The translations under genes were made by a program, and so were the position numbers. From positions 286,867-350,866 of IMG/VR virus record IMGVR_UViG_3300024259_002152: 64,000 nucleotides of DNA; one strand, 5' to 3'. Below are positions 6,134-62,757 of this stretch, piece after piece. Within the stretch, counting starts at the first letter, position 1; each line of letters begins with the position of its first letter. The notes beneath the pieces are model-generated. The model did no database searches, was not told where the DNA came from, and saw only the letters and a program-made list of their open reading frames with translations.

Positions 6134-6203
6134 AATTCCAGACAATGAATTTTTCAAACATATAGGTAGAAATGTGTCGTTATAACAATTATAGGAGTAT
6201 AAG

Positions 6204-6614
6204 ATGTATAGAAAGATGTCTCGACGAGGGGAAATTGATGGATTCTGGCTATTCATGATCTTGATTTTTGCCATAATTCCAGCTATAAAATATTTTGCAG
6301 GAGATGACAAAGTAGAAGAACCAGAAGGTGCAGCCCCTACGGTTAAAATAATTGACAATAAGGGCGTTATTCTATCTGTCAGAGATAATAGGACAACTGC
6401 TCCTATTAATAGTCAAGTTAAAATACCTCTCCCAAAAGATGCGGTATATACTATTAATAGAATTTCCCCAGATGATAAAGATCCAGAGATTTTGCCTGTT
6501 GTTTTTTCGACTGGATATCTTATAACTTCTTTCGATAAGAGGGGAACATGGGAAATAAATATGTATGATGAGAATGATTTGTTAGTTGAGTGGATTAGAG
6601 TAACTGTTTATTAG
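6204..6614 (+). CDS. membrane-anchored hypothetical protein
   Basis: GGAG RBS, N-terminal hydrophobic helix. Confidence 0.7.
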   Translation: MYRKMSRRGEIDGFWLFMILIFAIIPAIKYFAGDDKVEEPEGAAPTVKIIDNKGVILSVRDNRTTAPINSQVKIPLPKDAVYTINRISPDDKDPEILPVVFSTGYLITSFDKRGTWEINMYDENDLLVEWIRVTVY

Positions 6615-6622
6615 AAAGCAAA

Positions 6623-7120
6623 ATGATGTTAAAAAATAAAGCTGAAAAAGATATTAAAAAAATGTGGGCTTTAATCCAAAAGGATTCAGAAGCCTTAGGC
6701 TATTATTTATCAACAGGGAAGTTTATGGACGGAGTAAATGAACAAGATATTTTTATGATGATGGTGGTTTGTCTAAAAATTGTAGTGGGTGAGTTGTATG
6801 TCAATACCGAAAAATATGAGAAATATCCAGCAAAGCATTATACAGAAGATGAGTTTGTGAATATGGTGATCGATTCTATCGGAAAAAAATTGCCCGACAA
6901 AAATGATTTTGATGGGACTATCGCACATATAAAGAGTATAAAATCTCTTATGTGGGGTTACGCAAAATATAACTGTGAGAATTATCTTAAATTATATATG
7001 GCATTTAATCAGCATGATACAGGAAATTGTACTTTTGGTCATCTTAAGTCATGTGCTGCCATAGTCCTTGTGGAATGTATTTTAAGAAGAACTCAAAAAA
7101 ATAGGAATATCTGTTTGTAG
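6623..7120 (+). CDS. hypothetical protein, resembles 5573..6133
   Basis: Similar W...DIFMMMVVC module. Confidence 0.7.
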   Translation: MMLKNKAEKDIKKMWALIQKDSEALGYYLSTGKFMDGVNEQDIFMMMVVCLKIVVGELYVNTEKYEKYPAKHYTEDEFVNMVIDSIGKKLPDKNDFDGTIAHIKSIKSLMWGYAKYNCENYLKLYMAFNQHDTGNCTFGHLKSCAAIVLVECILRRTQKNRNICL

Positions 7121-7171
7121 AAGAGTACTGGTAAAAGTTATCAAAAACATAAAAAATCTTTGGAAAAACAC

Positions 7172-7567
7172 ATGAGTAAATTAAAAATTGGAATAGATAT
7201 AGATAATACCATTGACGCGTCTAAAACAAGTGTTAATTTTTTCTCTTTGTTTACTAATGCTATAAGGCATGTTGCCCAAATTTATATTATCACCAACAGA
7301 GATCCTGGAGAAGATAGTAGGGCAGACACTATGTCGGAGCTAGATATGTTTGGTATTTATTATGATGAGTTGATTATAACTGCTGAAAAATCTCAACACA
7401 TTCTGCAATTAGGTGTTGATGTTTATTTTGATGATACGGATGAATATTTTCTAGATCTTCCTGAGTCCGTTGCTGTATTTAAAATCAGAGAGTTTGGTAA
7501 TTTTGATTTTAAAGAACATAAATGGCTGTATGGAGATAAGACGGGTATCAATATTGACAAGAAATAA
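7172..7567 (+). CDS. HAD-superfamily phosphatase
   Basis: IGIDIDNT, ITNR, K, YFDD motifs. Confidence 0.8.
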   Translation: MSKLKIGIDIDNTIDASKTSVNFFSLFTNAIRHVAQIYIITNRDPGEDSRADTMSELDMFGIYYDELIITAEKSQHILQLGVDVYFDDTDEYFLDLPESVAVFKIREFGNFDFKEHKWLYGDKTGINIDKK

Positions 7568-7605
7568 ACAGAAGGAAAGTGGAGCGTTTTTCAGAATATA
7601 ACTTT

Positions 7606-8184
7606 ATGAACTGGTATAAACGAGCAAATTTACAAACTACTCTTCCATATTTCCAAGAATTTGAAGATATGGGGGAGTATACTCCAAATGAAGAAAGTAT
7701 CAATAAAGTTCTGGAGAACCAGTTTGGAGCCACCATTGTCTCAGATATTGGGCAAGGAGATTCGGGAGTGGCTTATCTTCTATCTAATGGAGATATTTTA
7801 AAAATCACCACTAATACTCAAGAGGGTCAAGTAGCAGATTATCTATGGGAGCATCCTAATCCCAATGTGGTGGAGTATAAATTAGTTTGGAAAGAAGGGG
7901 ACCTTTATTATATTGTGATGGATAATATCCAGACTATGGCGAGTGATTATATTTCAGATGATTTTAATCATATTGCCGAAATTTTAGAGACAAATCAGTG
8001 CTATAAGCCCCAGTGTGCTTATTCCATCGTCCAAAATGATAATACTCTTGATGCTTCGATCAAGTATCAAATTTTATCATATTTATCCTCTTTGATGGAA
8101 ATCCCAATTCCAATATTTGATTTTTTAAACGAAAATAATGTTGGTATAAAAGATGGAAAACTCATATTCTTTGATATAACATAA
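7606..8184 (+). CDS. protein kinase-like fold protein
   Basis: IGQGDSGVAY, ILKIT, YIVMD, DFLNENNVG, FFD; starts MNWYKRA. Confidence 0.7.
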   Translation: MNWYKRANLQTTLPYFQEFEDMGEYTPNEESINKVLENQFGATIVSDIGQGDSGVAYLLSNGDILKITTNTQEGQVADYLWEHPNPNVVEYKLVWKEGDLYYIVMDNIQTMASDYISDDFNHIAEILETNQCYKPQCAYSIVQNDNTLDASIKYQILSYLSSLMEIPIPIFDFLNENNVGIKDGKLIFFDIT

Positions 8185-8259
8185 TTGAAAAGTGATTATA
8201 TTTCCTTTATTCTAATACTATCTGTATGAATGGACGATATATTAGAAAAAGGATAATAT

Positions 8260-9327
8260 ATGAAAATAGAAGATGTTGGTAATAGCTCTTTTAAATGTAA
8301 ATTATTGTTAGGGAATGCTAAAAATGTTTTGCAAGATATCCCTGAAAATACTTTTCATATGGCAGTGACAAGTCCTCCTTATTGGGACCAAAGAGACTAT
8401 AACGTAGATGGTCAATTAGGTCAAGAAAATAGCCCTGAAGAGTATGTAGAGAATTTAGTCGCTATCTGTAGAGAAGTAAGAAGAGTTATTAGGGAAGATG
8501 GCACTTTTTGGCTTAATATCGGAGACGGTTATTGTAAGAAAACTATTAAATCTTCAAATCTTAAACAAAAAGATTTAGTAGGTATACCGTGGATGGTTGC
8601 GTTTGCTCTTAGGCAAGATGGGTGGTATTTACGAAGTGATATTATTTGGAAAAAAACAAATCCTATGCCCGAGAGTGTAAGAACAAGACCTTCTAAATCT
8701 TATGAACATTTATTTCTTTTCTCCAAATCGGAAAATTATTTCTATGATGCAGAAGCTATAGCAGAGCCACAGAAAGAGATTTCTGTTAAAAGAGCTTATT
8801 CTAAAAATAGAGTAGAAAAGAGAAAAGATTATCAAAATGATAATTATGCTATTAGTGGTAAGTCCCAAGATAAAACATATAGAAAGATGAGAAAAATATT
8901 AGACGAGATGGGAGAAGATGAGGTCATCACGTGTAATAAAAAAGATGTTTGGGAAATAGCTACTGCCGACAATAAGGTTAAACATTTTGCCATCTATCCA
9001 AGAGAATTAGTTAAGCCTTGCATTTTGGCAGGTAGTTCTTCGAAAGGTTGTTGTCCAAAATGCCAATCTCCATGGATTATGGAAAAGGGAAAAAATTGGG
9101 AACCAAGTTGTAATTGTGGAGAAACAGAAGTAAAAGAATGTATTGTTCTAGATCCTTTCAATGGGTCAGGAACTACAGGAATGATATGTAGAGAATATGG
9201 TAGAAAGTATGTAGGAATAGATATTAGTGAGGAATATTTATCTTATGCAAGAGATGCTTTGATAGGAGAGAGGAGAGCAGAAATGGCAGAAGAAGTAGAT
9301 TCTATTCAACAACTTAAAGTTTTGTAA
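8260..9327 (+). CDS. DNA methyltransferase (N4-C/N6-A, beta class)
   Basis: TSPPY then DPFNGSGTT. Confidence 0.92.
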   Translation: MKIEDVGNSSFKCKLLLGNAKNVLQDIPENTFHMAVTSPPYWDQRDYNVDGQLGQENSPEEYVENLVAICREVRRVIREDGTFWLNIGDGYCKKTIKSSNLKQKDLVGIPWMVAFALRQDGWYLRSDIIWKKTNPMPESVRTRPSKSYEHLFLFSKSENYFYDAEAIAEPQKEISVKRAYSKNRVEKRKDYQNDNYAISGKSQDKTYRKMRKILDEMGEDEVITCNKKDVWEIATADNKVKHFAIYPRELVKPCILAGSSSKGCCPKCQSPWIMEKGKNWEPSCNCGETEVKECIVLDPFNGSGTTGMICREYGRKYVGIDISEEYLSYARDALIGERRAEMAEEVDSIQQLKVL

Positions 9328-9446
9328 AATAAGAACTTACAGAAATCTTACAATTTAGGAGTGAAAAATTCCAGACAACGCTTTTCTTAAAATTATAGCA
9401 TAGAAAGTGTGTTTTTGAAGAAAGTATAGATATAGAAAGGGCTGTT

Positions 9447-10136
9447 ATGGTAGTTAAATTGACTCATCCATTTTTGATGGAATGTATTGATCCTAAGGGT
9501 CTTTTAAGGAATAACCTTAAAAGCAAATCTATGACATTCTCCATGTTTTCTGGCCGACTTAGAAAGCAAGCTACAAAGTATGCGACAGGTGGGGATGGTA
9601 AAGTAAACGAAGATAAAGAAAATAAATACAAAGGTAATGGGTTTGAGTTATTCTGTGAGATATTTGTAAGAATATTTGGTTTTGATATGCTGGTTTCAAT
9701 AAATCCCGATTCTTATGAAATAGTTGCTGATGGTGATGATACAGGAGTTGATGGAATAGGAATAGGTAACAATGGAAAAATTCATACCTTACAAGCCAAG
9801 TTTTGTATCGGCACAGAAGAATTAACAGCTAATAGGCAACATCTTACAAATTTCACTTCTGCATCTATGCTTAGGTATAATGTTAATAAAGATGAAGTAT
9901 GCAATCTTAATAGGCCTGGGATAAAAAGTAAAATTAATATGACGATCATGCATACTGGTAAGGGTATTAATCATTATACTGAGAATGATATGCTTTGTGG
10001 GCTTATCAGAGAGATAGGTTTAAAGGATATCAAAAATAAAGTAGATGGTAATAATATTTTTTGGGAATGTTTTAGGAAATCATGGGACAAACATCTTACA
10101 GAACTTATGAAGAAAAAGAGAAATGATGAAAAATAG
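9447..10136 (+). CDS. PD-(D/E)XK restriction endonuclease-like protein
   Basis: GNGFE...DTGVDGIG...LQAKF (Mrr-like D-QxK). Confidence 0.65.
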   Translation: MVVKLTHPFLMECIDPKGLLRNNLKSKSMTFSMFSGRLRKQATKYATGGDGKVNEDKENKYKGNGFELFCEIFVRIFGFDMLVSINPDSYEIVADGDDTGVDGIGIGNNGKIHTLQAKFCIGTEELTANRQHLTNFTSASMLRYNVNKDEVCNLNRPGIKSKINMTIMHTGKGINHYTENDMLCGLIREIGLKDIKNKVDGNNIFWECFRKSWDKHLTELMKKKRNDEK

Positions 10137-11877
10137 ATATTTGTATCCATATCAAGAATTGCTTATTGAAAAAAGTTTAGACCCATCTATGGAAAAAGGC
10201 AGAATAATATTACCTACTGCTTCTGGTAAGGGTGTTATTTGCAGAGATATCATACGCAGAATGATTATATCTTCTGAAAATAAACTCAATCAGTTTCTGG
10301 GGGCTATTTTCACTCCTCGTCTTCTTTTAAATAAACAGTGGACAAATGATTGTAGGGAATATTTTGAAAAAATAGATAGACCTTATAATTTTGCTCTTGT
10401 TGGTTCTTTAGGATTTAATAAGGAAGAAGCGATATCTATTGAAGAGGCGTTATATTTCATATCAGGAGTTGGGGTTGATGCTCCCTGTCATGCTAAAACA
10501 GCTAAAGATTTAAAAGAGTTTGTAGAAAGCAACAGGACAAAAGGTGTTAATACAATTGTAATTTCTACTTATCACTCTAATAGAATTGTTAGAGCCTCAG
10601 GACTGGTTTTTGATTGTGCTGTGTATGATGAAGCTCACTACCTGCCTGGCAGAGAGCCTCAGGCAGGAGCTACAAGAGCTATTGATGAATTGTTTGAAGC
10701 AACAGAAGTGTTAACAAAGAAAAAAATATTTACTACTGCTACAGAAAAACTTGGAGATGATCTGTTTGATATTGAAGAGGATAATATAGAGTATAATGGC
10801 AGAGGTATGGAAAATGAAGATATTTATGGTGCTGAGATATTTGGATGGATAGATAAAAAAACAGGACGACATAGACGTGTTTCTCCAAGAGATTTAATTG
10901 AATTCGGCTCAATATTGGAACCTAGAGTTTATGTTATTACAGATAATGACATAGACAAATATGAGCTTGATAGTCTTAGCGATGTTCCTAAAATAACTCC
11001 TGATCAGCCTCTGGGGCAACGTCAGGCAGAAGAAGTAGCTAAGGTTACTTTTATATCTTTTGAGGGCCATAAAAAAGAACTTAAAAAAGAGTCTGATTTT
11101 CCTGAGAAAATTGGGGCTAAGATGATGGTTGTTTGTGATGGTTTTAAAGAACTCGAGGGAATTAGAAACTCAAAAGAACTGCAAAATTTTAGGAGTAAAA
11201 ATCCTAAGGTGAAATTATATTTTATTAGTTCTGATTCTGATGGAGGCATATATATTCATGGGCAAGAAAAACAAAATTACAGTAATAAATCTAAAAAAGA
11301 TTTTTTAGATGCTCTGAATAATTTGAGTTCTGAAGAAGATGCTATAATTTACCATATTGATATCCTTACTTGCGGAATTGATGTCCCTTCATTAACAGGT
11401 GTTTTATTCTTTAAAGAATGCAAGTTAATAAAATTGCTTCAAAATATAGGTAGGGGTTCAAGACTTCATATCGAAGATAGAATAAGATGGGAAAATGGAG
11501 AGATCGAACCTGGAGGAAAAGGGTATATTAAACCTAGTTTTCATGTTTTACTCCCAATACTCAAACAGGACACTGAAGATTTTGTTAATAAATTTGTCAA
11601 AATAATAAATAGAATGAGGGATAATTATGGTTTTAAGGCTTATGAATTCTTACATATTGGGGCCACCAAAGAGCCTGGTGGAAAAGTGCCTATTGAAATT
11701 GCTGGACTAAAAACTCCTTTAAGTCAACTGAAAGATAAAGCTGGTAGAGTCTATTATGAGTGGATAGAAGATAAAAGGATTAAAAGAGAAGAAAGAAAAA
11801 TACAGGAAGAGATAGATAATCTTAAAAGATGGGTAGAGAATGGAGAATGGGATAAAATTGCAGAATATAAGAAATAA
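10123..11877 (+). CDS. SF2 helicase/ATPase (restriction-type)
   Basis: PTASGKG, DEAH, TAT, GIDVP, QNIGRGSR. Confidence 0.88.
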   Translation: MMKNRYLYPYQELLIEKSLDPSMEKGRIILPTASGKGVICRDIIRRMIISSENKLNQFLGAIFTPRLLLNKQWTNDCREYFEKIDRPYNFALVGSLGFNKEEAISIEEALYFISGVGVDAPCHAKTAKDLKEFVESNRTKGVNTIVISTYHSNRIVRASGLVFDCAVYDEAHYLPGREPQAGATRAIDELFEATEVLTKKKIFTTATEKLGDDLFDIEEDNIEYNGRGMENEDIYGAEIFGWIDKKTGRHRRVSPRDLIEFGSILEPRVYVITDNDIDKYELDSLSDVPKITPDQPLGQRQAEEVAKVTFISFEGHKKELKKESDFPEKIGAKMMVVCDGFKELEGIRNSKELQNFRSKNPKVKLYFISSDSDGGIYIHGQEKQNYSNKSKKDFLDALNNLSSEEDAIIYHIDILTCGIDVPSLTGVLFFKECKLIKLLQNIGRGSRLHIEDRIRWENGEIEPGGKGYIKPSFHVLLPILKQDTEDFVNKFVKIINRMRDNYGFKAYEFLHIGATKEPGGKVPIEIAGLKTPLSQLKDKAGRVYYEWIEDKRIKREERKIQEEIDNLKRWVENGEWDKIAEYKK

Positions 11878-11945
11878 CTCTTTCCAGGCGATGAGATTTT
11901 CAGTTTAGTAAAGTGTAAATGATGTTATAAATATAAGGAAGCAAG

Positions 11946-13133
11946 ATGGAGCTTACTGAAAAGTTAAAGAAAGAAGCTGTAAGGGGACTTATTAAAGAGA
12001 TATGCAAAGAAGATGGCTCTATACAAAATGTCCATACTCCTTATTCTCTTTGTGAAGATATAATAGAAAAGGCAGTTGATTATATTGAAGATTTAGAGAA
12101 TAAAAGTATTCTTGTTATGTTTAACCTTGAATTTATTGATAGTCTTATTGACTTGGGTATAGATCCTAAGAATATAACTTTTATGTCAGATTCAGAACAA
12201 AGAAGAGGTTTGGCAGAAAATTTTTATGAAGTTGAAGCTATTGAATTTAAATTATCAGATTTAAATGGAGATAATATAATGGGTAAACAATTCGACCATG
12301 TGATTGGTAATCCTCCTTATCATAAAAAAGGAAATGAAAAAGACACAAAGACGCAAGCGATATGGCCATCATTTGTTGATTTGTCTTTACAGTATTGTAA
12401 GGATGATGGGCATTTGTGTTTTGTGCATCCATCAGGGTGGAGAGGAAATGGAATGTATAAAAAAATAGGTAGGTTGATGAAATCAAAGCAGATAGAATAT
12501 TTAGAAATTCATGATGAAAAAGATGGGATGAAAGTATTCGATGCTGAGACAAGATATGATTGGTATGTTTTGCAAAATAAATATAATGAAGATGTTACCG
12601 AAATTAAAGACCAAATAGGGAAAATCTCTAAAATAAATATAAGAGACATGGAGATAATTCCTAATTTTAACATTATAGATGTTCAGAATCTCATTGCTAA
12701 AGATGGGGAGGAAAAGGTTACCGTTCTGTCAGATTCTACATATCATACTCAATCTGGTGTTAAAAAAGGGTTTATGAGCGAAACAGAAACAAAGACACAT
12801 AAATATCCGTGTGTGTATGTGGTTAACTCTGTGGGAGAAATGCAATTATGGTATTCTTCTGTAAAAAAAGGACATTTTGGGACAACCAAGCTTATATTTT
12901 CTAATGGCAGAATATCTTCTGCTAATTATTTTGTAGATCAAAATGGAGAATACGGTTTGACTCAATTTTCTTATGGGATTATAGACAGTATCGAGAATTT
13001 GAGAGATATATATAAAGCAATGAGAACTAAAGAATTTAAAAATTTAATGGAGGCATGTTCGATAGGAATGCTTACTATTAATAAAGATGTTTTAAAAACA
13101 TTCCGTAAAGATTTTTGGAAGGAGTTTGTATAA
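11946..13133 (+). CDS. N6-adenine methyltransferase, catalytic/TRD part (Eco57I-like)
   Basis: FDHVIGNPPY, FVHPSGW; no DPxxGxG motif I. Confidence 0.8.
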   Translation: MELTEKLKKEAVRGLIKEICKEDGSIQNVHTPYSLCEDIIEKAVDYIEDLENKSILVMFNLEFIDSLIDLGIDPKNITFMSDSEQRRGLAENFYEVEAIEFKLSDLNGDNIMGKQFDHVIGNPPYHKKGNEKDTKTQAIWPSFVDLSLQYCKDDGHLCFVHPSGWRGNGMYKKIGRLMKSKQIEYLEIHDEKDGMKVFDAETRYDWYVLQNKYNEDVTEIKDQIGKISKINIRDMEIIPNFNIIDVQNLIAKDGEEKVTVLSDSTYHTQSGVKKGFMSETETKTHKYPCVYVVNSVGEMQLWYSSVKKGHFGTTKLIFSNGRISSANYFVDQNGEYGLTQFSYGIIDSIENLRDIYKAMRTKEFKNLMEACSIGMLTINKDVLKTFRKDFWKEFV

Positions 13134-13738: not shown

Positions 13739-13829
13739 AAATTCCAGACAACGCTTTTCTTAAAATAGTAGCATAGAAAGTGTGTTTTTCAACTAGAACA
13801 GTGTTTTTTAAAGAAACGAAGGCGCAAAA

Positions 13830-14150: not shown

Positions 14151-14196
14151 TATTTCGTAAAAATTCCAGACAACGCTTTTTTCAGGGTTGTAAGAT

Positions 14197-14409: not shown

Positions 14410-14501
14410 AATTCCAGACAACGCTTTTCTCAGAATTATAGCATAGAAAGTGTGTTTTTTTAACAATAGAGTGGTTTTTAACAAGAAACGGAGATGTAGC
14501 G

Positions 14502-15023: not shown

Positions 15024-15055
15024 AAAGGCACAAGCTAATAACTTGTGCCTTTTTT
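15024..15055 (+). terminator. intrinsic terminator
   Basis: AAAGGCACAAG/CTTGTGCCTTT hairpin plus T tract. Confidence 0.8.
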
Positions 15056-15123
15056 CATTTTTCCAGACAACGCTTTTCTCAAAGTTGTATAATAAATGTG
15101 CTAATAAAGGTTGATAGAAAAGT

Positions 15124-16995: not shown

Positions 16996-17029
16996 GGGGA
17001 GTGGTTAATATCCACTCCCCTTCTTTTTT
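16996..17029 (+). terminator. intrinsic terminator
   Basis: GGGGAGTGG/CCACTCCCC plus T tract. Confidence 0.75.
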
Positions 17030-17196
17030 CCAGACAATGAGTTTCTCAAAATGGTGATATATAAATGTTAATTCTGATAAACTTATTTTCGAGGAGATAA
17101 AGATGCCAAGAAATCGGACAATCTTATGGGAGCAATAACAGATCGTCTTGATGGTGTTCCTTCTATTTTTAATGAATTTGAATTGGAAAAAAAGTA

Positions 17197-36998: not shown

Positions 36999-37252
36999 AT
37001 TGTAGTAGGTTATAGGAAAAATGGAAATTCCTGGCACCAAAATAGGAAATTCATTATATCAATTTTTTGGTTCTATATAGAAAAATTAGCGTTTCATTAC
37101 ACTAAAATTTTTGGTTCTCGGTGGACCTTTAAAAAATGGATCAAAAATTCCCCAAAAAATAATAGATTTTTTTATTAAAATTTTCAATAAAGGAGAAATA
37201 AATTGTCTGGAAAATCGATAGTGTCGATAAATTCCAGACCACGAGAAAACAC

Positions 37253-37281
37253 TTGCAAAAGTGATTAGTAAATGGTAAAAT
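37253..37281 (+). promoter_or_regulatory. sigma70-type promoter between two inverted-repeat pairs
   Basis: TTGCAA-17-TAAAAT. Confidence 0.55.
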
Positions 37282-37382
37282 AGAGAAGAATCGATAGTCT
37301 GGAAAAAATAGGAGCAAAAATAATTCCAGACAAGTATTTTACCATCACCCCTTGATTTCCCCCTAGGAGAAAGGTTTTTGAG

Positions 37383-38102
37383 ATGATTGAGATTATGTAC
37401 TCACCAGAAGATGTAGGCAAAGAAGTTAAAAATAGTCATGGAAAACATACAATAATTAGAAAATACCATATGACAGAAAAAGAAAAGGAGATAGCACGAA
37501 ATAAGTGGTTAGTAATAACAGCAAAAATAAATAAAAGAATAGTTAAGCAAGCAGGAGATTTATTTTATAATCCATACCGAAAGGGAGTATATTACTATCA
37601 GATCTATTCTATGTTCTTATTAGGAGCTAATAAATGGCATAGTTTAAATGCTGTCCTAAAGAAGATGGAAAGTATTATGTCAAAGATAGTAGTTAAAAAA
37701 GATGGATATCAGATAACAGCATGGGACAAATTTCGAGGTAAGGGTAGCAGAGACAGTGCTATCAGATGTAAAGATTTTGTTGGCAGGGTGCAGGAGAATA
37801 TGGTATTCTTTCAACGTCTTACTAGACTACATCCTTATGGTTATAAGCTATGGCAGGTTGGTTCTGCTGTAGATATTAAGAGAGTAAGTAGAAGAGGGTT
37901 TGTAAGTGGTTGTTATTACTACAGGTTATCTACTTATGGCACATCAAAAGAAGCATTACCTATAAGAGATTATAGAGAATTTAACTTTCCTCAGCATGAG
38001 AGGAAATATGTTAGTTATAAGTTCATTGGGACTGTTATCACTAAAGATAAAGTCATAACTGAAGGGAAAATAAATGAGATGTCACAAATGCAATCAGGAT
38101 AG
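37383..38102 (+). CDS. basic hypothetical protein next to the candidate origin
   Basis: 239 aa, K/R/Y rich. Confidence 0.75.
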   Translation: MIEIMYSPEDVGKEVKNSHGKHTIIRKYHMTEKEKEIARNKWLVITAKINKRIVKQAGDLFYNPYRKGVYYYQIYSMFLLGANKWHSLNAVLKKMESIMSKIVVKKDGYQITAWDKFRGKGSRDSAIRCKDFVGRVQENMVFFQRLTRLHPYGYKLWQVGSAVDIKRVSRRGFVSGCYYYRLSTYGTSKEALPIRDYREFNFPQHERKYVSYKFIGTVITKDKVITEGKINEMSQMQSG

Positions 38103-38640
38103 TATAAAGATTGATAATGGACATATTATTTGTGAGATATGTGGTTTAGATATAGATGTTAGTTCTTTAGAAGATCCATTATTTGATTTATTCTTCTATA
38201 ATGAAAATTTGCAAGAAGCAGAGAAGTTAGGTAAGGAGTCGTATATAGAGGGTAAGGACATGGGAGATAATCCTTATTCTATTGCTTCTGATCAGCTTAT
38301 GCTTAATAAGAGGTGGGAGGCAGGTTATAGCACCGAAAGGGATATAGAGGAAAAAGAGGCATTATTAATTTCTGCCGAAAATTTAAAAAATGTCCTTGAA
38401 AAACTAGAAAAACTACAAACTGCTATAAAAGAGAAGGAACAAGTCTCTGATCAGACCATAGAAGAACTAAGAGAAGGTAATTCTATTCTCGTAGAAAGAA
38501 TAGATAATCTTAATTCTCTTTGTGTTAATTTAGAGAAGATAGTTAAAAGAGTTAAGATACTAGAAAAGACAAAATATCTCCTTCCTGGGCGATACAGGAG
38601 GGAAATAGCTAAGATTACGATAAAAATTCCAGACAAGTGA
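38074..38640 (+). CDS. zinc-ribbon plus coiled-coil protein
   Basis: CHKC...CEICG; NPY...WEAGY. Confidence 0.7.
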   Translation: MRCHKCNQDSIKIDNGHIICEICGLDIDVSSLEDPLFDLFFYNENLQEAEKLGKESYIEGKDMGDNPYSIASDQLMLNKRWEAGYSTERDIEEKEALLISAENLKNVLEKLEKLQTAIKEKEQVSDQTIEELREGNSILVERIDNLNSLCVNLEKIVKRVKILEKTKYLLPGRYRREIAKITIKIPDK

Positions 38641-38697
38641 TTTTTTATAATGGTATAATGTGGCAATAGTAAAAGCAGTTATATTAGGAGAAAAATC

Positions 38698-39198: not shown

Positions 39199-39231
39199 AT
39201 TCCAGACAATGAGTTTTAGTTAACAGTAGGT

Positions 39232-40242
39232 ATGGAAACTACAATGACTATTGAAGTAAAAAAATTATCGGACATGGATGCTGCTCCTATTCGTAGAAAT
39301 AGGACTTGGTTTAATGACATTGATATCATCTACGGATACAGTCAGTTCCCAGACTATTTGGAATGGGGAATGCCAAAGGGTAAGATCAGCTTATGGGCAG
39401 GAACTGCTGGAGTAGGTAAAAGTCGTCTTTGTATCGATGTTGCTAAGAATTTTAGCACTCGTTATGAGAATGGTAGAGTTCTTTATTTCCAAACAGAATC
39501 GACTATGGAAGATTTTGCTGGATGGGCAAAGGATACTAAGAAGTATGATAATATTGAGTGTTGTGGGGCTAGTGCGATAGAAGATATTATCGATGTTATT
39601 TATCTTAAGAAACCCAAGCTAGTTTTTATTGATAGTGTTAATGAAATTGATGAATTTGAGAATGGTAATAAAAGAGAGGCTCGAAGACTTATTAAGGGAG
39701 AGAATAGTAAGCCAGGATTGAAAAAAGCAGCTAATGATGTTGGTTGTCATATTATTTTGTTAGGTCAAATAAATCAAGATGGCAAGACTATTAAGGGTGG
39801 TACATCTTTACCTCACTTAGTAGATATAGCATTGCATCTTCGTTCCTTATCTCCTGAGGAGGTAAAGGGTTATGTAGGAGAAGCATTATCGGGAATGTTT
39901 AGGATGTCGGTAGGTGAGAAGCATAGACATGGTTCTAAGGAGAATTTTGCTTGGTTCCAGCATCATGATAATGGGGTTAGGCAGTGGTCGATTCGTTCTA
40001 ATGAGAATATTAAATGGCAAGAGACTTTTCATGATGCTCCACCACCTCCGCCTCCTATTGAGCCAGGGCATAATATTGATGGGACTTGGGACCAAAGCTC
40101 TCCTGAGTTTAGAGCTTCATGTGAGGCATATAAGAGAAGTCCTGAGGGTCAGAAATTGATTAGACAGTGGTATAAAGATCATAGTCCTACTGCTTATCAG
40201 AAGATAGGAAACTTCTTTGATGAGATATTTAATAAGAAGTAA
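39232..40242 (+). CDS. RadA/Sms-like RecA-fold ATPase
   Basis: GTAGVGKS, LYFQTE, FIDSVN, GQINQDG, HLVD. Confidence 0.8.
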   Translation: METTMTIEVKKLSDMDAAPIRRNRTWFNDIDIIYGYSQFPDYLEWGMPKGKISLWAGTAGVGKSRLCIDVAKNFSTRYENGRVLYFQTESTMEDFAGWAKDTKKYDNIECCGASAIEDIIDVIYLKKPKLVFIDSVNEIDEFENGNKREARRLIKGENSKPGLKKAANDVGCHIILLGQINQDGKTIKGGTSLPHLVDIALHLRSLSPEEVKGYVGEALSGMFRMSVGEKHRHGSKENFAWFQHHDNGVRQWSIRSNENIKWQETFHDAPPPPPPIEPGHNIDGTWDQSSPEFRASCEAYKRSPEGQKLIRQWYKDHSPTAYQKIGNFFDEIFNKK

Positions 40243-45463: not shown

Positions 45464-45540
45464 TTTTTTCCAGACAACGCATTTCTCGAAATGATTATAT
45501 GTAGCACCGAATAAGTTATTTCTTATAGGAGATTTGTTCA

Positions 45541-46246: not shown

Positions 46247-46439
46247 TTTTCCAGACAATGAGTTTCTTAGAATGGTATAGTAGACAAGGGCGTATTAGTC
46301 CTTTTGTTGAGCAGATGCTTAACTACCCATATTAATGTCGTAATTATAATCGACAGAAGGAGTTAGGTGATTTGCTCAACATTTATTTTATCACAAAAAG
46401 TATAGTAAAATTTGTGACATTTTGTCGGAAAAATAAAAA

Positions 46440-50712: not shown

Positions 50713-50786
50713 TTAAAATTCCAGACAATGAGTTTGTAGAAATGGTAGTAGTATAGCACCGAATCCTTTTTTAGCGGAAAAAATAA

Positions 50787-51150: not shown

Positions 51151-51270
51151 TTATGAAATTTACATTCCTCCCCTTGCTAATTGCTCCTCATCTTTTTCCC
51201 TCCAAAATTAGCAAGGGGTCTTTTTTTGTCCATTTTTCCAGACAATGAGTTTTCCAAAAAGGTAAGTATT

Positions 51271-51952: not shown

Positions 51953-52168
51953 ATGGAAATGAAGAATCTTAAAACAATGAAGATAGAAAAAGAGCATATG
52001 CAATATTATGCTTCTGAAATTGTTGATAAGAGTGTCTCAAAAGGAGATATTTTTAAAGTAGTTAGAAAGGTTCAATCTGAGGCTAAAGAGAATGGAATTT
52101 ATCTATCTAATTGTGCTGATCTCTATTGGTTCTTGATAGAGTGTAGGGAGAAAATTCCAGACAAGTAG
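51953..52168 (+). CDS. hypothetical protein
   Basis: Ends in the TTCCAGACAA motif (KIPDK). Confidence 0.6.
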   Translation: MEMKNLKTMKIEKEHMQYYASEIVDKSVSKGDIFKVVRKVQSEAKENGIYLSNCADLYWFLIECREKIPDK

Positions 52169-52239
52169 TTTTTAGAAATGGTGTAGTGTTGTTAGTGTGT
52201 TCAGAGAAGTAAAATAACATTTCTTAGAGAGGTTAAACC

Positions 52240-55756: not shown

Positions 55757-55785
55757 CACCTATGACCTCCATGGGTTATTTAGCG

Positions 55786-55835
55786 AACCCCCTTATTGTT
55801 TGAATAGTTATATTTAGATAGTAAGGGGGTTTTTT
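55786..55835 (+). terminator. intrinsic terminator
   Basis: Long hairpin AACCCCCTTATT/AGTAAGGGGTT plus T tract. Confidence 0.75.
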
Positions 55836-55906
55836 ATTAAAATTCCAGACAATGAGTTTTAAGTTATTATAGAATGTAAACAATAACTTTTTGTCGGAGA
55901 AATAAA

Positions 55907-56740: not shown

Positions 56741-56802
56741 TTTCCAGACAATGCGTTTGTTATAATGATAGATTGTAGTAATAACTTTTTTGGAGAAATA
56801 AA

Positions 56803-58160: not shown

Positions 58161-58221
58161 TTCCAGACAACGCGTTTATTACTTTGATAGGTTGTAATAT
58201 CAACTTTTTGGAGAAATAAAA

Positions 58222-58403: not shown

Positions 58404-59735
58404 ATGTCAGCGATAACAGAACATAAGAAATGTATTTGTGTAGAATTTGGAGATACTAACAACAACAAGGTATGGCAATATACTTTGTATGATGATGACA
58501 CTGCCTTAACAGAGTGGGGGAGAGTTGGGAAAGGTCTACAAAGTAAGATAACAAGTCATTCTCAGGCTCTTAAAAAGTGGAGAGAAAAAACCAATTCCAA
58601 TAACAAACCCGACAAAATGTATACTGAAGTAAAAGCAGTTGATACGGGGGGTTCTGTTTCTGTCGGCTCTGTTAAAAATGCAGAATTGAAAGATGTTGCT
58701 AAGAAACAGATTAAATCTAAAAATCCTGTTATTGCACAACTTATTGATTTTCTTGTTCAAGTCAATGCCCATCAGATTTTGAAACAATCGGGTGGCAAGA
58801 TCATGTATGATGCAAACTCCGCACAATTCAAAACACCACTCGGAGTTATTGACCCAGTGCAAGTAGCAGAAGCTAGAGATTTGCTTGTTATGATTTCTGA
58901 TTTTGTAAAGGCTGAGGACTTTGATAATAAAGAATTTGGTAGGATTCTTAATTCCTATCTTAGACTTATTCCTCATGATGTAGGAATGTCTAAGATTTCT
59001 ACTGGACGAATATTTCCTAATACTCAAACAGTTATTGCAGAGAATGATTTGCTTGATGGTTTGGAAACTTCCTTTATTGATATTACGACAAAGCCGACAA
59101 AGAAGAAAACCAAAAAGAAAGATGCTCCACAAATTTTTAATGTTGAAATGGAGATTGTAAGTGATAAGCAAATCTTGTCTCATGTCAAGCACCTTTATCA
59201 ATCGACAAGAAAGAGTATGCACCAATCTAACAATCTTTCTGTTCAAACAGTTTATGCTGTAACGATCAAGAACATGAAAGATGGATATGATAAGCATGGT
59301 GCTAAGATGAGTAACATTTGGCAGTTGTGGCACGGAACAAAGGCAAGTAATCTTTTGTCTATTATGAGGCAAGGTTTGATTATTCCTTCTTCCAGTTCTG
59401 GTCATGTGACAGGTCGAATGTATTCCGATGGGGTGTATTTTTCTGACATTAGTACTAAAGCACTGAATTATGCTACGAACTACTGGGGAGGTGGAGGCAA
59501 TACTGATAAAACGTTTATGTTTTTGGCGGACGTAGCGATGGGTAATTACCATATCGCCAAAAGTAGTTGGACTAAATATCCTATTCCTGGTTCGGATAGT
59601 ACATGGGCGAAAGGCAGAGATAAAGGGGGAGTTAATTCTGGAGTGGTCAACGATGAAATGATAGTATATCGTCTTGATCAGTGTAATCTTGTTTATTTGG
59701 TAGAATTTGTGCCAAATTCTCAGCTTAGAACATAA
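58404..59735 (+). CDS. WGR-domain poly(ADP-ribose) polymerase (PARP)-like protein
   Basis: NNNK...EWGRVG; YLRLIPH regulatory domain; LWHGT, GRMYSDGVYFS, KALNY, DEMIVY. Confidence 0.9.
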   Translation: MSAITEHKKCICVEFGDTNNNKVWQYTLYDDDTALTEWGRVGKGLQSKITSHSQALKKWREKTNSNNKPDKMYTEVKAVDTGGSVSVGSVKNAELKDVAKKQIKSKNPVIAQLIDFLVQVNAHQILKQSGGKIMYDANSAQFKTPLGVIDPVQVAEARDLLVMISDFVKAEDFDNKEFGRILNSYLRLIPHDVGMSKISTGRIFPNTQTVIAENDLLDGLETSFIDITTKPTKKKTKKKDAPQIFNVEMEIVSDKQILSHVKHLYQSTRKSMHQSNNLSVQTVYAVTIKNMKDGYDKHGAKMSNIWQLWHGTKASNLLSIMRQGLIIPSSSSGHVTGRMYSDGVYFSDISTKALNYATNYWGGGGNTDKTFMFLADVAMGNYHIAKSSWTKYPIPGSDSTWAKGRDKGGVNSGVVNDEMIVYRLDQCNLVYLVEFVPNSQLRT

Positions 59736-60610: not shown

Positions 60611-60685
60611 AATTCCAGACAATGAGTTTCTTAAAACAATAGAGTAGTTACGAATAAAAACTAATAATTTTACGGAGAAACAAAA

Positions 60686-61574: not shown

Positions 61575-61610
61575 AGGGAGTAGGCGTGGTTTCCTACTCC
61601 CTTATTTTTT
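61575..61610 (+). terminator. intrinsic terminator
   Basis: AGGGAGTAGG/CCTACTCCCT plus T tract. Confidence 0.75.
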
Positions 61611-61630
61611 CTAGACAATGAGGTTGTTAT

Positions 61631-61936
61631 ATGAGAATTCAAACAGAAGTAGAGCATATATTTAGAGTTTTTGTATATTGTCCGAAAGGACATAAAGTTA
61701 AAGGACATTCTGAATGGATATTTTCTCATCCAAAATGTATTTCATGTCAAAAAAGAAAACATGAGGGCAAAACTTTTTTCAGAATAGATTTTTTAGGTGT
61801 TGCCCCACAGGACAGGGTTAAAATAAGAAAATATTGTAGAGACCAATTAAGAGAATATTATGAAAAATATATCATTATGAACAGGAAAAAGGAAAATAAT
61901 TCCAGACAACGTGTTTCTCAGAATGGTATAGTGTAG
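61631..61936 (+). CDS. hypothetical protein
   Basis: CPKGH...CISC. Confidence 0.6.
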   Translation: MRIQTEVEHIFRVFVYCPKGHKVKGHSEWIFSHPKCISCQKRKHEGKTFFRIDFLGVAPQDRVKIRKYCRDQLREYYEKYIIMNRKKENNSRQRVSQNGIV

Positions 61937-61966
61937 CACTGATTAAAACTCTTTTGGAGAAATAAA

Positions 61967-62278
61967 ATGAACCAGATACCTGAATTAAAATCCTACCAGG
62001 ACAATGAGATCAAAGAGGGAAGTGAATTTGCCAAGATGGTGGCAGATAAGATCAATAGTGGTTATGGGACTAGTAAGTTATTCCGAAAGGGATTTGCTGC
62101 CACTATAGCAGGTCCAAAGACCCACAATACAGTTCAGCAACTATTTTTTAAGTTGGTTCAAGAGTGTATTAAAGAAATGGCTAATGCTAGGTTTGTTGAT
62201 GGTCGAAACCAGGATAGTCATGAATTTGCAAAAGAGTGTTTGGATACAATAGAGAAGCACTGTTTGCCATATATCTAA
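61967..62278 (+). CDS. hypothetical protein
   Basis: HNTVQQ...DGRN...LPYI phage-type motif. Confidence 0.7.
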   Translation: MNQIPELKSYQDNEIKEGSEFAKMVADKINSGYGTSKLFRKGFAATIAGPKTHNTVQQLFFKLVQECIKEMANARFVDGRNQDSHEFAKECLDTIEKHCLPYI

Positions 62279-62294
62279 TTTTCGGAGAAATAAA

Positions 62295-62513
62295 ATGAGC
62301 AAAGAAACAAAAGCAGTCCAAAAGAAATGTTTTAATAAGTGTCCTAGATGTGAGGCTGGGATAAAAGATATTGAATATGTTGAATGGGGAGCATATGAAT
62401 GCTCAGGAGAGACAATCATACAAAAGGCTGTATGTAAACAATGTGGACAAGAATTTACAGAGAATTATGTCTATTCTTACTCTGAGATAGAATTTGAGGT
62501 AGAAACAAAATGA
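62295..62513 (+). CDS. zinc-ribbon protein
   Basis: CPRC...CKQCG. Confidence 0.65.
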   Translation: MSKETKAVQKKCFNKCPRCEAGIKDIEYVEWGAYECSGETIIQKAVCKQCGQEFTENYVYSYSEIEFEVETK

Positions 62514-62689
62514 CTGTTAAAGAACTAATAGACGAACTTTCACAAATGCCTATGGACACAAAGGTTGTAACTACAGAATATGCAAGCCCCGAGGATTCTG
62601 TACCGTATGTAAAAGATATAACGGAACCAATGTATCATAAAAATGGTATTTTAGGAACACATGGAGAGCCAGTTGTAGATATCTCATAA
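62510..62689 (+). CDS. hypothetical protein (paralog A)
   Basis: MTVKELIDELSQMPMD. Confidence 0.6.
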   Translation: MTVKELIDELSQMPMDTKVVTTEYASPEDSVPYVKDITEPMYHKNGILGTHGEPVVDIS

Positions 62690-62757
62690 TAATTCCAGAC
62701 AATGAGTTTCTTATTATGATATACTGTAAACAATAACTTTTTTGTCGGAGAAATAAA

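What the first reader, a model, noticed from the sequence alone, without database searches (positions are those of the whole stretch)
6136..62702. TTCCAGACAA element punctuates the genome into modules
Seen: at least 21 exact + strand copies, plus variants at 11882, 37232 and 61609. They sit immediately after a stop codon, tRNA or terminator, or overlap a gene end (two ORFs end KIPDK). Each is followed by a short (C/T)G-T-rich stretch, and often by TATAAT/TATAGT 18 nt after CAGACA (15061, 38627, 46249). The copies at 9369, 13742 and 14411 are near-identical over about 50 bp. Those at 55843 and 62693 share a leader ending GGAGAAATAAAATG. I found none between 17.1 and 37.2 kb. Inference: a phage-activated promoter with a non-standard -35 box (analogous to the T4 MotA box) that may also supply homology for shuffling gene cassettes.
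Basis: partly seen in the sequence, partly recalled or inferred. Interest (0 to 1): 0.6.

Follow-up and report, generated by a model that had tools for sequence, protein, structure and literature searches.

The report
Huge-phage promoter box and its operator
A nearly invariant 10-base box marks one class of promoters in a huge uncultured phage. The same box, as rigidly spaced inverted pairs, brackets the promoter of a conserved uncharacterised gene, so the box is probably the binding site of a phage-encoded regulator that switches on a block of accessory genes.

Summary
In detail: 22 exact TTCCAGACAA copies against about 0.17 expected, 21 of them on the coding strand. Copies sit in gene gaps, just after stops, tRNAs or terminators, and carry a fixed extended consensus.

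The window is the last 64 kb of a 351-kb huge-phage contig, and it holds 21 of the genome's 23 plus-strand copies. A second, canonical promoter family occurs genome-wide, so the box marks a separate regulatory class.

New here: the gap before gene 37383-38102 (P0001) holds four box copies as two back-to-back pairs around a canonical promoter.
- 40 of 62 related upstream regions have both pairs, always 91-93 nt apart.
- The box sequence differs by lineage. Each lineage's single-copy promoter boxes match its own pair arms (53% against 2%, p <= 0.0005).
- A 298-kb relative has 50 plus-strand copies and the same pairs.

Best reading: promoters that depend on a phage-encoded DNA-binding factor, functionally like T4 MotA promoters but unrelated to them. 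P0001 (weak winged-helix-like fold) is the candidate.

The cassette-shuffling idea is not supported statistically (p = 0.8) and rests on anecdotes. No transcription start data could be obtained.

The parts
6136..6168 (+). class B promoter-like site (box plus T-run plus TAnnnT hexamer)
   Evidence: orthologous copy in G001 at 205279
9369..9422 (+). class B site; 54-bp cassette 91% identical to the one at 13742; left border of a 4.4-kb block absent from G001
11882..11914 (+). variant box TTCCAGGCGA followed by TGAGATTTTC, 64 nt before the Eco57I-like methylase gene; same 10-mer as the L072/L083 lineage
13742..13795 (+). class B site; right border of the block absent from G001
14164..14196 (+). 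class B site with ATG at +33 and no SD (possible leaderless start)
14412..14462 (+). class B site; its cassette matches those at 9369 and 13742
15024..15093 (+). terminator hairpin (15024-15052) followed by a class B site (15061; CAGACA-18-TATAAT)
16996..17060 (+). terminator hairpin (16996-17020) followed by the class B site at 17028, at the head of the 20-kb box-free run of small ORFs
37203..37241 (.). operator-like inverted pair 1: TTGTCTGGAA - 19 nt - TTCCAGACCA, upstream of the canonical promoter
37253..37281 (+). canonical (class A) promoter TTGCAA-AAGTGATT...-TAAAAT of the P0001 gene, between the two pairs
37295..37333 (.). operator-like inverted pair 2: TAGTCTGGAA - 19 nt - TTCCAGACAA, 92 nt from pair 1, over the predicted start of the class A transcript; its right arm is the copy at 37324
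37383..38102 (+). P0001, 239 aa; conserved family of more than 200 members with no Pfam, PHROG or PDB sequence match; confident model with weak winged-helix-like structural matches; candidate box-binding regulator
38074..38640 (+). P0002, 188 aa; N-terminal CxxC...CxxC zinc-ribbon-like motif plus predicted coiled coil; overlaps the end of P0001; conserved in synteny; ends in KIPDK across the box at 38627
38627..38659 (+). class B site (with TATAAT); orthologous sites in all nine lineages examined
39200..39232 (+). class B site before the AAA_25/DnaB_C-like gene; ATG at +32; orthologous sites in all nine lineages examined
45468..45500 (+). class B site 3 nt after tRNA-Phe
46249..46281 (+). class B site 2 nt after tRNA-Cys (CAGACA-18-TATAGT with TG)
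50719..50751 (+). class B site 5 nt after tRNA-Trp
51236..51268 (+). class B site
52155..52187 (+). class B site before the 556-aa HATPase-like gene; ortholog in G001 at 258044
55785..55875 (+). terminator hairpin (55785-55832) followed by a class B site (55843); ortholog in G001 at 261722
56742..56774 (+). class B site; ortholog in G001 at 262560
58161..58193 (+). class B site ahead of the PARP-like gene unit; ortholog in G001 at 264523
60613..60645 (+). class B site; ortholog in G001 at 266499
61900..61932 (+). class B site
62693..62725 (+). class B site with the shared leader ending GGAGAAATAAAATG

Best explanation
TTCCAGACAA is the specific upstream element of one class of phage promoters (class B) in a huge phage that redirects host RNA polymerase.

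The box sits where a -35 element would be, or slightly downstream of it depending on the register. It is followed by G, a T-run and TAnnnT-type hexamers. Transcription probably starts near +33 to +39 from the start of the box.

The box is read by a phage-encoded sequence-specific DNA-binding protein, not by the host primary sigma. The most likely reader is P0001 (37383-38102).

The P0001 gene is first expressed from a canonical sigma-A-type promoter. That promoter is bracketed by two inverted pairs of the same box, 92 nt apart. The proposed sequence of events is:
1. P0001 accumulates.
2. It occupies single boxes and activates the class B units: tRNAs, methylases, a PARP-like gene, a DndB-like gene and many small unknown genes.
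3. It occupies the two pairs and shuts down its own early promoter.

Shown: the motif statistics, the geometry, the restriction to one region, conservation at orthologous junctions, co-variation between pair arms and promoter boxes, and the rigidity of the pair architecture.

Inferred: promoter activity, the transcription start site, the identity of the binding protein, and activation versus repression.
For: Motif statistics and layout
- 22 copies against 0.17 expected, 21 on the coding strand.
- Extended consensus with T27/A28/T32 in 21, 19 and 17 of 23 sites, and TG just before.
- Intergenic position after stops, tRNAs or terminators and before genes.
- 21 of the 23 genome-wide plus-strand copies lie in the last 64 kb of 351 kb.
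- One-mismatch variants occur at background level.

A separate regulatory class
- A distinct canonical promoter family, TTGAAA-AGTGAAAG-N9-TATAAT, is found genome-wide.
- No phage RNA polymerase domain is detectable here or in a relative rated 100% complete at 548 kb. Three to five sigma-like ORFs are present.

The inverted pairs
- The only two back-to-back pairs in the genome lie at 37203-37333, both with 19-nt gaps, around a canonical promoter.
- Of 62 distinct related upstream regions, 40 have both pairs, always 91-93 nt apart. 38 of those 40 have a TTGnnn-N16-18-TAnnnT promoter between the pairs.

Co-variation and conservation
- The box differs by lineage, with 25 distinct 8-mers around an invariant CCAG.
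- Single-copy boxes match their own lineage's pair arms perfectly in 53% of cases against 2% across lineages; permutation p <= 0.0005.
- The boxes before the slot gene and before the AAA_25 gene are orthologous in all nine lineages examined.
- G001 has 50 forward and 3 reverse exact copies (control 0 and 0), clustered around its P0001 homologue, with all four operator arms exact.

P0001 itself
- It has more than 200 homologues at 53-77% identity.
- Its model is confident, pLDDT 90.6.
- Its best structural matches are weak but nearly all winged-helix DNA-binding domains. The nearest Atlas shape is a tandem winged-helix Rep3 initiator.

Start site
- SD-less ATGs lie at exactly +33 in 10 G001 cassettes and at +32 or +33 in 2 window cassettes.
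Against: - There are no transcript data.
- The register is ambiguous. The best -10 match (+27 to +32) predicts a start near +39, which conflicts with the ATGs at +33. A weaker hexamer at +19 to +24 would fit them.
- The structural matches of P0001 are all below the level the tool calls reliable (best Z 5.2; Foldseek nothing at E <= 0.001; Atlas TM 0.34).
- Residue 152 tracks the base after CCAG in raw counts (45 of 53). On the tree there are only 2 independent contrasts, so this is not evidence that P0001 reads the box.
- Linkage of the pairs to the P0001 gene is also compatible with another protein regulating P0001.
- The right arm of pair 2 (37324) lacks a good -10, so that copy is probably an operator arm rather than a promoter.
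- Phage sigma factors remain possible readers of the box.
Confidence: 0.6

Rival explanations
1. The box is the -35 element of one of the phage's own sigma factors (183-aa, 238-aa or SigH-like 244-aa ORFs). No separate activator is involved.
For: - Three sigma-70-family ORFs lie in the contig, one with RpoD-like region 2 hits.
- Relatives also carry 2-5 such ORFs.
- The box lies at the -35 position relative to the best -10 hexamer.
- Lineage-specific boxes could follow lineage-specific changes in sigma region 4.
Against: - The same box forms rigidly spaced inverted pairs that flank a canonical promoter. Free sigma factors do not normally bind operators, and a -35 element has no reason to occur as a palindrome.
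- The conserved stretch covers 10 bp plus G plus a T-run, longer than a typical region 4.2 site.
- The pairs are linked to P0001, not to the sigma genes, which lie about 57 kb away.
Confidence: 0.17
2. Class B sites are promoters of a phage-encoded RNA polymerase that profile searches cannot see. Recognition runs from the box to the start site at about +33.
For: - The conserved sequence is unusually long, especially in G001: TTCCAGACAAGTGgTTTTTTAnTAnTnTAGgTTGTTAAT.
- Position +33 is a purine, and 10 SD-less ATGs lie exactly there. This resembles single-polymerase phage promoters whose conserved sequence reaches the start site.
- Several very large ORFs (about 2000 aa) in the contig were not annotated.
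Against: - No T7-like or Rpb1/Rpb2-type domain is found in this contig. No Rpb1-type or T7-like domain is found in the 298-kb relative or in the 548-kb relative rated 100% complete. The T7-like search had no positive control.
- Several sigma genes argue for use of the host enzyme.
- The inverted pairs around a canonical promoter are not explained.
Confidence: 0.07
3. P0001 is a Rep-like replication initiator, the 400-bp gap at 36983-37382 is an origin, and the scattered boxes are initiator-binding sites that also influence transcription, as DnaA boxes do.
For: - The nearest Atlas shape is a Rep3 initiator with two winged helices, and the top PDB hits include ORC/Cdc6 winged-helix domains.
- Rep-type initiators bind inverted repeats at their own promoter for autorepression (textbook knowledge, not tested here).
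- A DnaB_C/AAA_25-like ATPase lies two genes downstream in all relatives.
Against: - The structural scores are weak.
- The boxes are not clustered as iterons. They are single and sit at fixed spacing to -10-like hexamers in front of genes over more than 60 kb.
- GC skew keeps its sign across the window.
Confidence: 0.07
4. The box acts mainly at the RNA level (a processing or protein-binding site at the ends of upstream transcripts, and hairpins in the P0001 leader) or mainly as a recombination substrate (PeSL-like mobile cassettes), rather than as a promoter element.
For: - The box directly follows stop codons and tRNA 3' ends.
- The inverted pairs fold as stable hairpins, z = -6, and their arms show compensatory change across lineages.
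- Cassettes 88-92% identical over about 50 bp precede non-paralogous genes.
- One 4.4-kb block absent from G001 is flanked by two such cassettes, and one slot between two boxes holds unrelated genes in different lineages.
Against: - Single copies keep the sequence of one arm without a partner, so the sequence matters, not the pairing.
- The fixed-distance TAnnnT hexamers and the preceding terminators fit a promoter.
- No Rfam family other than tRNA matches in the window.
- Breakpoints are not enriched at box-bearing junctions, p = 0.8.
Confidence: 0.06
5. Class B sites are ordinary early promoters read by the host primary sigma alone, with an odd but tolerated -35 region.
For: The sites carry a TG-extended -10-like hexamer and an A-rich upstream tract. 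Extended -10 promoters can work without a good -35 (general knowledge, not tested here).
Against: - A near-invariant 10-mer plus downstream G and T-run would not be maintained without a specific reader.
- The box varies between related phages together with their operator arms.
- A separate, near-consensus promoter family already exists in the same genome.
Confidence: 0.03

Closest known systems
T4 middle promoters: MotA box with MotA/AsiA sigma appropriation (PMC2988021, PMC6755090)
   Same: - A phage that uses host RNA polymerase.
- A promoter class that keeps a TAnnnT -10 element, often with TG, while a phage-specific box of about 10 bp replaces the -35 element.
- Dozens of copies in front of prereplicative or accessory genes.
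- The activator itself is made from an earlier promoter class.
   Different: - No MotA or AsiA homologue is present.
- The box lies 17 bp (or 9 bp) from the hexamer, not 12+/-1.
- The box is almost invariant, whereas MotA tolerates many deviations.
- The box also occurs as two inverted pairs that bracket the candidate regulator's own promoter, which is not described for motA in that review.
- The candidate protein looks winged-helix-like, not like the MotA 'double wing'.
PeSL cassettes (promoter-early plus stem-loop) of T4-type phages (PMC2839356, PMC4122927)
   Same: - Short conserved promoter cassettes, often right after a terminator hairpin.
- They are repeated about 20-50 times in variable regions, mostly in front of small unknown genes.
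- A few insertion or replacement differences between relatives are flanked by them.
   Different: - PeSL promoters are sigma-70-like early promoters.
- For PeSLs, recombination between copies and mini-circles were shown experimentally.
- Here, breakpoints between two collinear genomes are not enriched at the box, most copies have no stem-loop, and no circular intermediates could be tested.
Activators with winged-helix domains that bind at or over the -35 region (PhoB/OmpR family, SARP/AfsR)
   Same: - The binding site overlaps or replaces a poor -35 element, while -10 recognition by the primary sigma is kept.
- The P0001 model's weak structural matches include OmpR/PhoB-type and AfsR domains.
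   Different: - Those proteins bind direct repeats and are host response regulators.
- P0001 has no receiver domain and no sequence similarity to them.
- Its sites are single boxes, or inverted pairs 29 bp apart centre to centre.
Rep3/RepA-type plasmid initiators (tandem winged helices)
   Same: - This is the nearest predicted shape in the Atlas.
- These proteins use one recognition sequence in two ways: single sites, and an inverted repeat at their own promoter for autorepression (general knowledge).
   Different: - The match is weak (TM 0.34).
- There is no iteron array.
- The boxes sit at promoters spread over more than 60 kb.

Membership tests
T4 MotA/AsiA-dependent middle promoters | MotA activator (MotA_activ / MotCF domains) encoded by the phage | tested here: not met
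   PF09158 gives no match in the 351-kb contig. P0001 and nine other box-adjacent proteins have no such Pfam hit. The contig is about 73% complete.
T4 MotA/AsiA-dependent middle promoters | AsiA co-activator that remodels sigma region 4 | tested here: not met
   PF09010 gives no match.
T4 MotA/AsiA-dependent middle promoters | Box (a/t)(a/t)(a/t)TGCTTtA centred at -30, 12+/-1 bp from the -10 element | tested here: not met
   The box here is TTCCAGACAA. It ends 17 bp before the best hexamer (+27 to +32) or 9 bp before the alternative one (+19 to +24).
T4 MotA/AsiA-dependent middle promoters | Sigma-70-type -10 element kept (TAnnnT, about half with TGn) and -35 element absent | tested here: met
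   T27, A28 and T32 occur in 21, 19 and 17 of 23 sites, with T24 and G25 in 17 and 11 of 23. The -35 position reads AGACAA.
PeSL-type mobile regulatory cassettes | Composite of promoter plus terminator stem-loop | tested here: inconclusive
   A strong hairpin lies directly upstream of 3 of the 21 copies and of the doubtful variant at 61609. Most copies follow a stop codon or tRNA without a hairpin.
PeSL-type mobile regulatory cassettes | Indels and replacements between close relatives end in the cassettes | tested here: not met
   Window against G001: breakpoints at 8 of 18 box junctions and at 40 of 104 other junctions, Fisher p = 0.8. Two suggestive cases exist: the block 9447-13738 and the slot 38627-39200. 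The pair is distant (about 60% protein identity), so the test has little power.
PeSL-type mobile regulatory cassettes | Circular recombination products between cassettes | not testable with these tools
   This needs inverse PCR or read-level junction analysis.
Sigma-70-type bacterial promoter (host primary sigma alone) | -35 hexamer close to TTGACA, 16-18 bp from TATAAT | tested here: not met
   The generic scan scores a few sites as CAGACA-18-TAnnnT, at most 4 of 6 in the -35 hexamer. The separate class A family does meet this feature.
Winged-helix DNA-binding proteins (for P0001) | Helix-turn-helix followed by a beta-hairpin wing, recognisable by structure comparison | tested here: inconclusive
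   The model is confident (pLDDT 90.6) and has helix-helix-hairpin units. Nearly all of the top 50 VIA matches are winged-helix domains, but the best Z is 5.2. Foldseek gives no match at E <= 0.001.

The most novel reading that the evidence does not exclude
P0001 founds an uncharacterised family of regulators in a clade of huge phages (300-550 kb). Each member reads a lineage-specific box of about 10 bp.
- As single sites, the box replaces the -35 element and switches on a large accessory regulon: the tRNA cluster, anti-defence-type enzymes and dozens of small unknown genes.
- As two inverted pairs held exactly 92 bp apart, the box loops and shuts off the regulator's own early promoter.

This would be a MotA-like takeover of the host polymerase, invented independently with an unrelated fold. 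Its DNA specificity would drift between lineages, so imported cassettes carrying a foreign box (such as the one at 11882) would be silent or regulated differently.
Probability: 0.4. Interest if true: 0.75.

Novelty: new variant of a known kind. Interest (0 to 1): 0.62.

Why it matters
Almost nothing is known about how the huge phages found in metagenomes schedule their gene expression.

This work gives a concrete, testable regulatory circuit for one such clade:
- a defined promoter class;
- its genome-wide map in two genomes (23 and 50 plus-strand copies);
- a conserved operator architecture seen in dozens of lineages;
- a single candidate regulator gene with no known relatives.

The natural variation of the box between lineages amounts to a ready-made specificity series for a new DNA-binding family.

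The box also marks which genes belong to one temporal or functional regulon: tRNAs, DNA methylases, a PARP-like enzyme, a DndB-like protein and many unknown genes. That helps to prioritise unknown genes for study. If the factor works with common host polymerases, the box and factor could serve as an orthogonal expression switch.

Tried and rejected
- Phage collection, DNA searches: no match.
- IMG/VR scan with the extended box: 46 single chance hits only. The same-box relative G001 was missed because its flanks differ.
- Single-protein locus scans with two window proteins: nothing.
- Single-sequence fold of P0001: unusable, pLDDT 35. The protein Atlas feature search gave no usable hit.
- PDB sequence searches with P0001 and with the profile: nothing meaningful.
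- Residue 152 against box specificity: striking in raw counts, but only 2 independent contrasts on the tree. Rejected as evidence.
- Cassette-shuffling breakpoint test: negative.
- Paralogy among genes behind similar cassettes: none, so gene duplication does not explain the cassette similarity.
- The near-identical relatives L070 and L071 differ by one 72-bp indel next to a tRNA, which does not end in a box.
- Terminase_6N search to place the phage: no match. The host remains unknown; a SigH-like sigma and strong SD sequences hint at Bacillota only.
- The generic sigma-70 scan is not enriched over shuffles and is uninformative in this AT-rich DNA.
- Complex prediction was not used, because no claim here rests on a protein-protein contact.

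Full report
**1. What the window is**

The window is the last 64 kb (286867-350866) of a single 350,866-bp IMG/VR virus contig that CheckV rates about 73% complete. GC is 33%, and about 95% of the contig is coding, almost entirely on the plus strand. The window carries 31 tRNA genes. It also encodes DNA methylases, a ResIII helicase, a DndB-like protein, a PARP-like protein, an SPFH protein and many small unknown ORFs.

No RNA polymerase domain is detectable in this contig. None is detectable in a 548-kb relative rated 100% complete either. Three sigma-70-family ORFs are present, one of them SigH-like. The phage therefore most likely redirects the host polymerase.

**2. The observation**

TTCCAGACAA occurs 22 times in the window, 21 times on the plus strand, against 0.17 expected.

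Genome-wide there are 23 plus-strand and 3 minus-strand copies. Only two plus-strand copies lie outside the window: one inside a gene, and one 1 kb upstream of the window. One-mismatch variants occur at background level, 17 on plus and 13 on minus, scattered and without the flanking consensus. Real copies are therefore almost invariant.

The extended consensus is AaAA-TTCCAGACAA-yGmgTTTyTyAnAATgG-TAgnaT. T27, A28 and T32 are present in 21, 19 and 17 of 23 sites.

Copies lie 0-40 nt after a stop codon, tRNA or terminator. Most lie 59-91 nt before an SD-led ATG.

**3. A second promoter family**

K-mer enrichment in gene gaps across the whole contig recovers the box and one other family: TTGAAA (or TTGCAA, TTGACA) followed directly by AGTGAAAG, about 9 nt, then TATAAT. 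This family has about 30 sites from 11 kb to 341 kb. I call it class A.

Class A has a near-consensus -35 and -10 and is the natural candidate for transcription by unmodified host polymerase. It precedes, among others, the 183-aa sigma gene, the tRNA cluster and P0001. The TTCCAGACAA sites (class B) are therefore a distinct class confined to one region, not the phage's general promoter.

**4. The key locus**

The 400-bp gap at 36983-37382 contains four copies arranged as two back-to-back pairs:
- pair 1: TTGTCTGGAA (37203-37212), 19 nt, TTCCAGACCA (37232-37241);
- pair 2: TAGTCTGGAA (37295-37304), 19 nt, TTCCAGACAA (37324-33).

These are the only two such pairs in the 351 kb. Between them lies a class A promoter at 37253-37281. 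The pairs thus lie upstream of its -35 element and across its predicted transcript start. That is a typical layout for an operator-controlled, autoregulated gene.

The gene behind the gap, P0001 (37383-38102, 239 aa), has no Pfam, PHROG or PDB sequence match.

**5. Relatives**

P0001 has more than 200 metagenomic homologues at 53-77% identity. I fetched their contigs. Synteny is conserved: a long run of small ORFs, a gap, the P0001 homologue, a zinc-ribbon/coiled-coil protein of about 180 aa, a variable slot, an AAA_25/DnaB_C-like ATPase, and then tRNAs.

Among 62 distinct upstream regions with at least 200 nt:
- 40 show both inverted pairs and 13 show one;
- the offset between the pairs is 91-93 nt in every one of the 40;
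- 38 of the 40 have a TTGnnn-N16-18-TAnnnT promoter between the pairs.

The half-site is not constant. There are 25 distinct 8-mers around an invariant CCAG, including TTCCAGAC, ATCCAGAC, TTCCAGGC, TTCCAGGT, AACCAGTC and TCCCAGAG.

Each lineage uses its own half-site as a single box, followed by a T-run and a TA-rich hexamer, in front of the slot gene and the ATPase gene. Those positions are orthologous to 38627 and 39200. At the four variable positions, single boxes match their own lineage's pair arms perfectly in 53% of cases, against 2% for other lineages' arms (31 lineages, 75 sites, permutation p <= 0.0005).

This co-variation is the strongest evidence in the study.

**6. An independent genome**

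G001 is an IMG/VR contig of 298 kb, about 62% complete, whose P0001 homologue is 71% identical. It has 50 forward and 3 reverse exact TTCCAGACAA copies, with 0 and 0 for the reversed-pattern control. The copies cluster at 221-283 kb, and two of the reverse copies form the two pairs.

Its consensus is longer: TAA-TTCCAGACAA-GTGgTTTTTTAnTAnTnTAGgTTGTTAAT. The window and G001 are collinear, and many boxes sit at orthologous junctions.

**7. Where transcription starts**

No transcript data could be obtained. Two registers are possible.

- The best -10 match, TAgnaT at +27 to +32, puts the box at about -39 to -30 and the start near +39.
- In G001, gene starts fall into two sharp classes. Ten have an ATG at exactly +33 with ORFs of 48-283 codons, mostly without an SD. 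About 24 have an SD-led ATG at +57 to +69, and there +33 is a G. The window has two cases at +32 and +33.

The second observation suggests a start at or just before +33. That would make yAnAAT at +19 to +24 the functional hexamer and place the box at about -33 to -24.

Some of the +33 ATGs have AGG or GGAG 6-9 nt upstream, so they could instead be read from upstream transcripts. The register is unresolved. In either register the box occupies the region where a -35 element would act.

**8. Who reads the box**

P0001 is the leading candidate for two reasons.
- The pair architecture is tied to its promoter in dozens of lineages.
- Its confident model (pLDDT 90.6) contains helix-helix-hairpin units whose top 50 structural matches are almost all winged-helix DNA-binding domains: ORC/Cdc6, forkhead, Fur, OmpR/PhoB, AfsR, TFE and histone H1/H5. 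The nearest Atlas shape is a tandem winged-helix Rep3 initiator.

These matches are weak (Z at most 5.2, TM 0.34, Foldseek nothing at E <= 0.001) and show at most a fold class.

I also tested co-variation between protein and site. Residue 152 is Y where the box reads CCAGA and T where it reads CCAGG or CCAGT, in 45 of 53 dereplicated lineages. On the tree, however, the residue changes only twice, so shared ancestry explains the pattern and I discard it as evidence.

P0002 has an N-terminal CxxC...CxxC motif, overlaps the end of P0001 and is conserved in synteny. It could be a partner. The phage sigma factors remain alternative readers.

**9. Cassette shuffling**

In favour:
- Cassettes 88-92% identical over about 50 bp precede genes that are not paralogues.
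- The 4.4-kb block 9447-13738 (helicase, Eco57I-like methylase and two others) is absent from G001 and is flanked by two such cassettes. It contains at 11882 a box variant, TTCCAGGCGA, identical to the box of another lineage.
- The slot between the boxes at 38627 and 39200 holds an unrelated membrane protein here, a conserved gene of about 125 aa in four relatives, and five genes in a fifth.

Against:
- Across the whole window, presence/absence breakpoints against G001 are no more frequent at box-bearing junctions (8 of 18) than at others (40 of 104); Fisher p = 0.8.
- The box-free 20-kb block turns over just as fast.
- The pair of genomes is distant, so the test has little power.

As it stands, the shuffling idea is not supported.

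**10. Comparison with known systems**

Functionally the closest system is the T4 middle promoter. There, a MotA box centred at -30 replaces the -35 element while the sigma-70 -10 element, often with TGn, is kept, and MotA works with AsiA (PMC2988021, PMC6755090). Membership fails: there are no MotA or AsiA homologues, the box and spacing differ, and the box is much less tolerant of variation.

PeSL cassettes (PMC2839356, PMC4122927) are the closest match for the arrangement of repeated promoter cassettes in variable regions. Their defining recombination role could not be shown here.

The motif itself does not appear in the phage literature. All 15 listed hits of 128 full-text matches are papers on unrelated topics.

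**11. Verdict**

- The box is, with high probability (about 0.85), the specific element of a distinct promoter class.
- A phage-encoded factor reads it with probability about 0.75.
- That factor is P0001 with probability about 0.5.
- The system is a new variant of a known kind: activator-dependent phage promoters plus an autoregulated regulator gene, built from an unrelated and uncharacterised protein family in huge phages.

Noticed in passing
whole contig; in the window at 37253-37281, 40296-40324, 43315-43343 and 53970-53997: A second promoter family of about 30 sites: TTGAAA, TTGCAA or TTGACA followed directly by AGTGAAAG, about 9 nt, then TATAAT. The AAGTGA element in the spacer is also kept in relatives (L070 near 11125, and all P0001-gene promoters). 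Why a canonical promoter carries a conserved spacer word is unexplained.
   Followed up: partly
window 14164 and 39200; G001 257788, 268043, 269374, 271843, 272742, 274164, 278330, 279181, 280148 and 281117: An ATG lies exactly 32-33 nt after the start of the box, directly after the TAGnTT hexamer, and opens real ORFs, mostly without an SD. These may be leaderless genes. For the AAA_25 gene, the N-termini of homologues suggest the true start is the second ATG at 39244.
   Followed up: partly
window 9447-13738, with 11882-11891: A four-gene block (229-aa unknown, ResIII helicase, Eco57I-like methylase, 207-aa unknown) is absent from the collinear relative G001. It is flanked by promoter cassettes 91% identical over 54 bp, and it contains a box variant, TTCCAGGCGA, that is the standard box of another lineage. 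It may be an imported cassette.
   Followed up: partly
window 38074-38640 (P0002): This 188-aa protein has an N-terminal CxxC...CxxC zinc-ribbon-like motif and a long predicted coiled coil. It overlaps the end of P0001 by 29 nt and is conserved in synteny in all relatives. It could be a partner of P0001.
   Followed up: no
window 41039-51150: A cluster of 31 tRNA genes is interrupted by small ORFs and by class A and class B sites. ARAGORN calls one odd tRNA at 42263-42338 with an undetermined two-base anticodon, and Rfam also scores it as a tRNA (41.7 bits).
   Followed up: no
contig 225469-226203, 266813-267364 and 267905-268621 (outside the window; loci L016, L018): Three sigma-70-family ORFs, one SigH-like (NCBIfam E 6e-24). 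The 183-aa one has a class A promoter 60 nt upstream and sits next to a gene with a type IV pilin-like N-terminal methylation motif and a NUDIX gene. The same pilin-like/sigma pairing recurs in relative L076.
   Followed up: partly
window 8260-9327, 11946-13133, 15654-16988 and 58404-59735: The class B region is rich in genes of counter-defence type: an N6/N4 DNA methylase, an Eco57I-like methylase, a DndB-like protein, and a PARP-like protein with both catalytic and regulatory domains. The nearest phage PARP homologues, at 32-34% identity, are in Xanthomonas, Stenotrophomonas and Klebsiella jumbo phages.
   Followed up: no
contig 245586-245613 and 246249-246271 (outside the window): Tandem runs of TTAGT/TTTAG pentamers lie directly before the SD (AAGGAG) of two neighbouring genes that share the leader GTAAGGAGTTACAAATG.
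   Followed up: no
window 36983-37200: The gap upstream of the operator pairs also holds direct repeats (TTTTTGGTTCT at 37064 and 37108) and an AT-rich stretch. ATCGATAG occurs only twice in the window, once next to each pair (37214 and 37290).
   Followed up: no
relatives L079/G001 (298 kb) and L080/G002 (548 kb, rated 100% complete): The P0001 family marks a clade of huge phages of roughly 300-550 kb. Homologues occur in many metagenome samples, and the only source-given sample label among the listed homologues is marine sediment. The host is unknown.
   Followed up: partly
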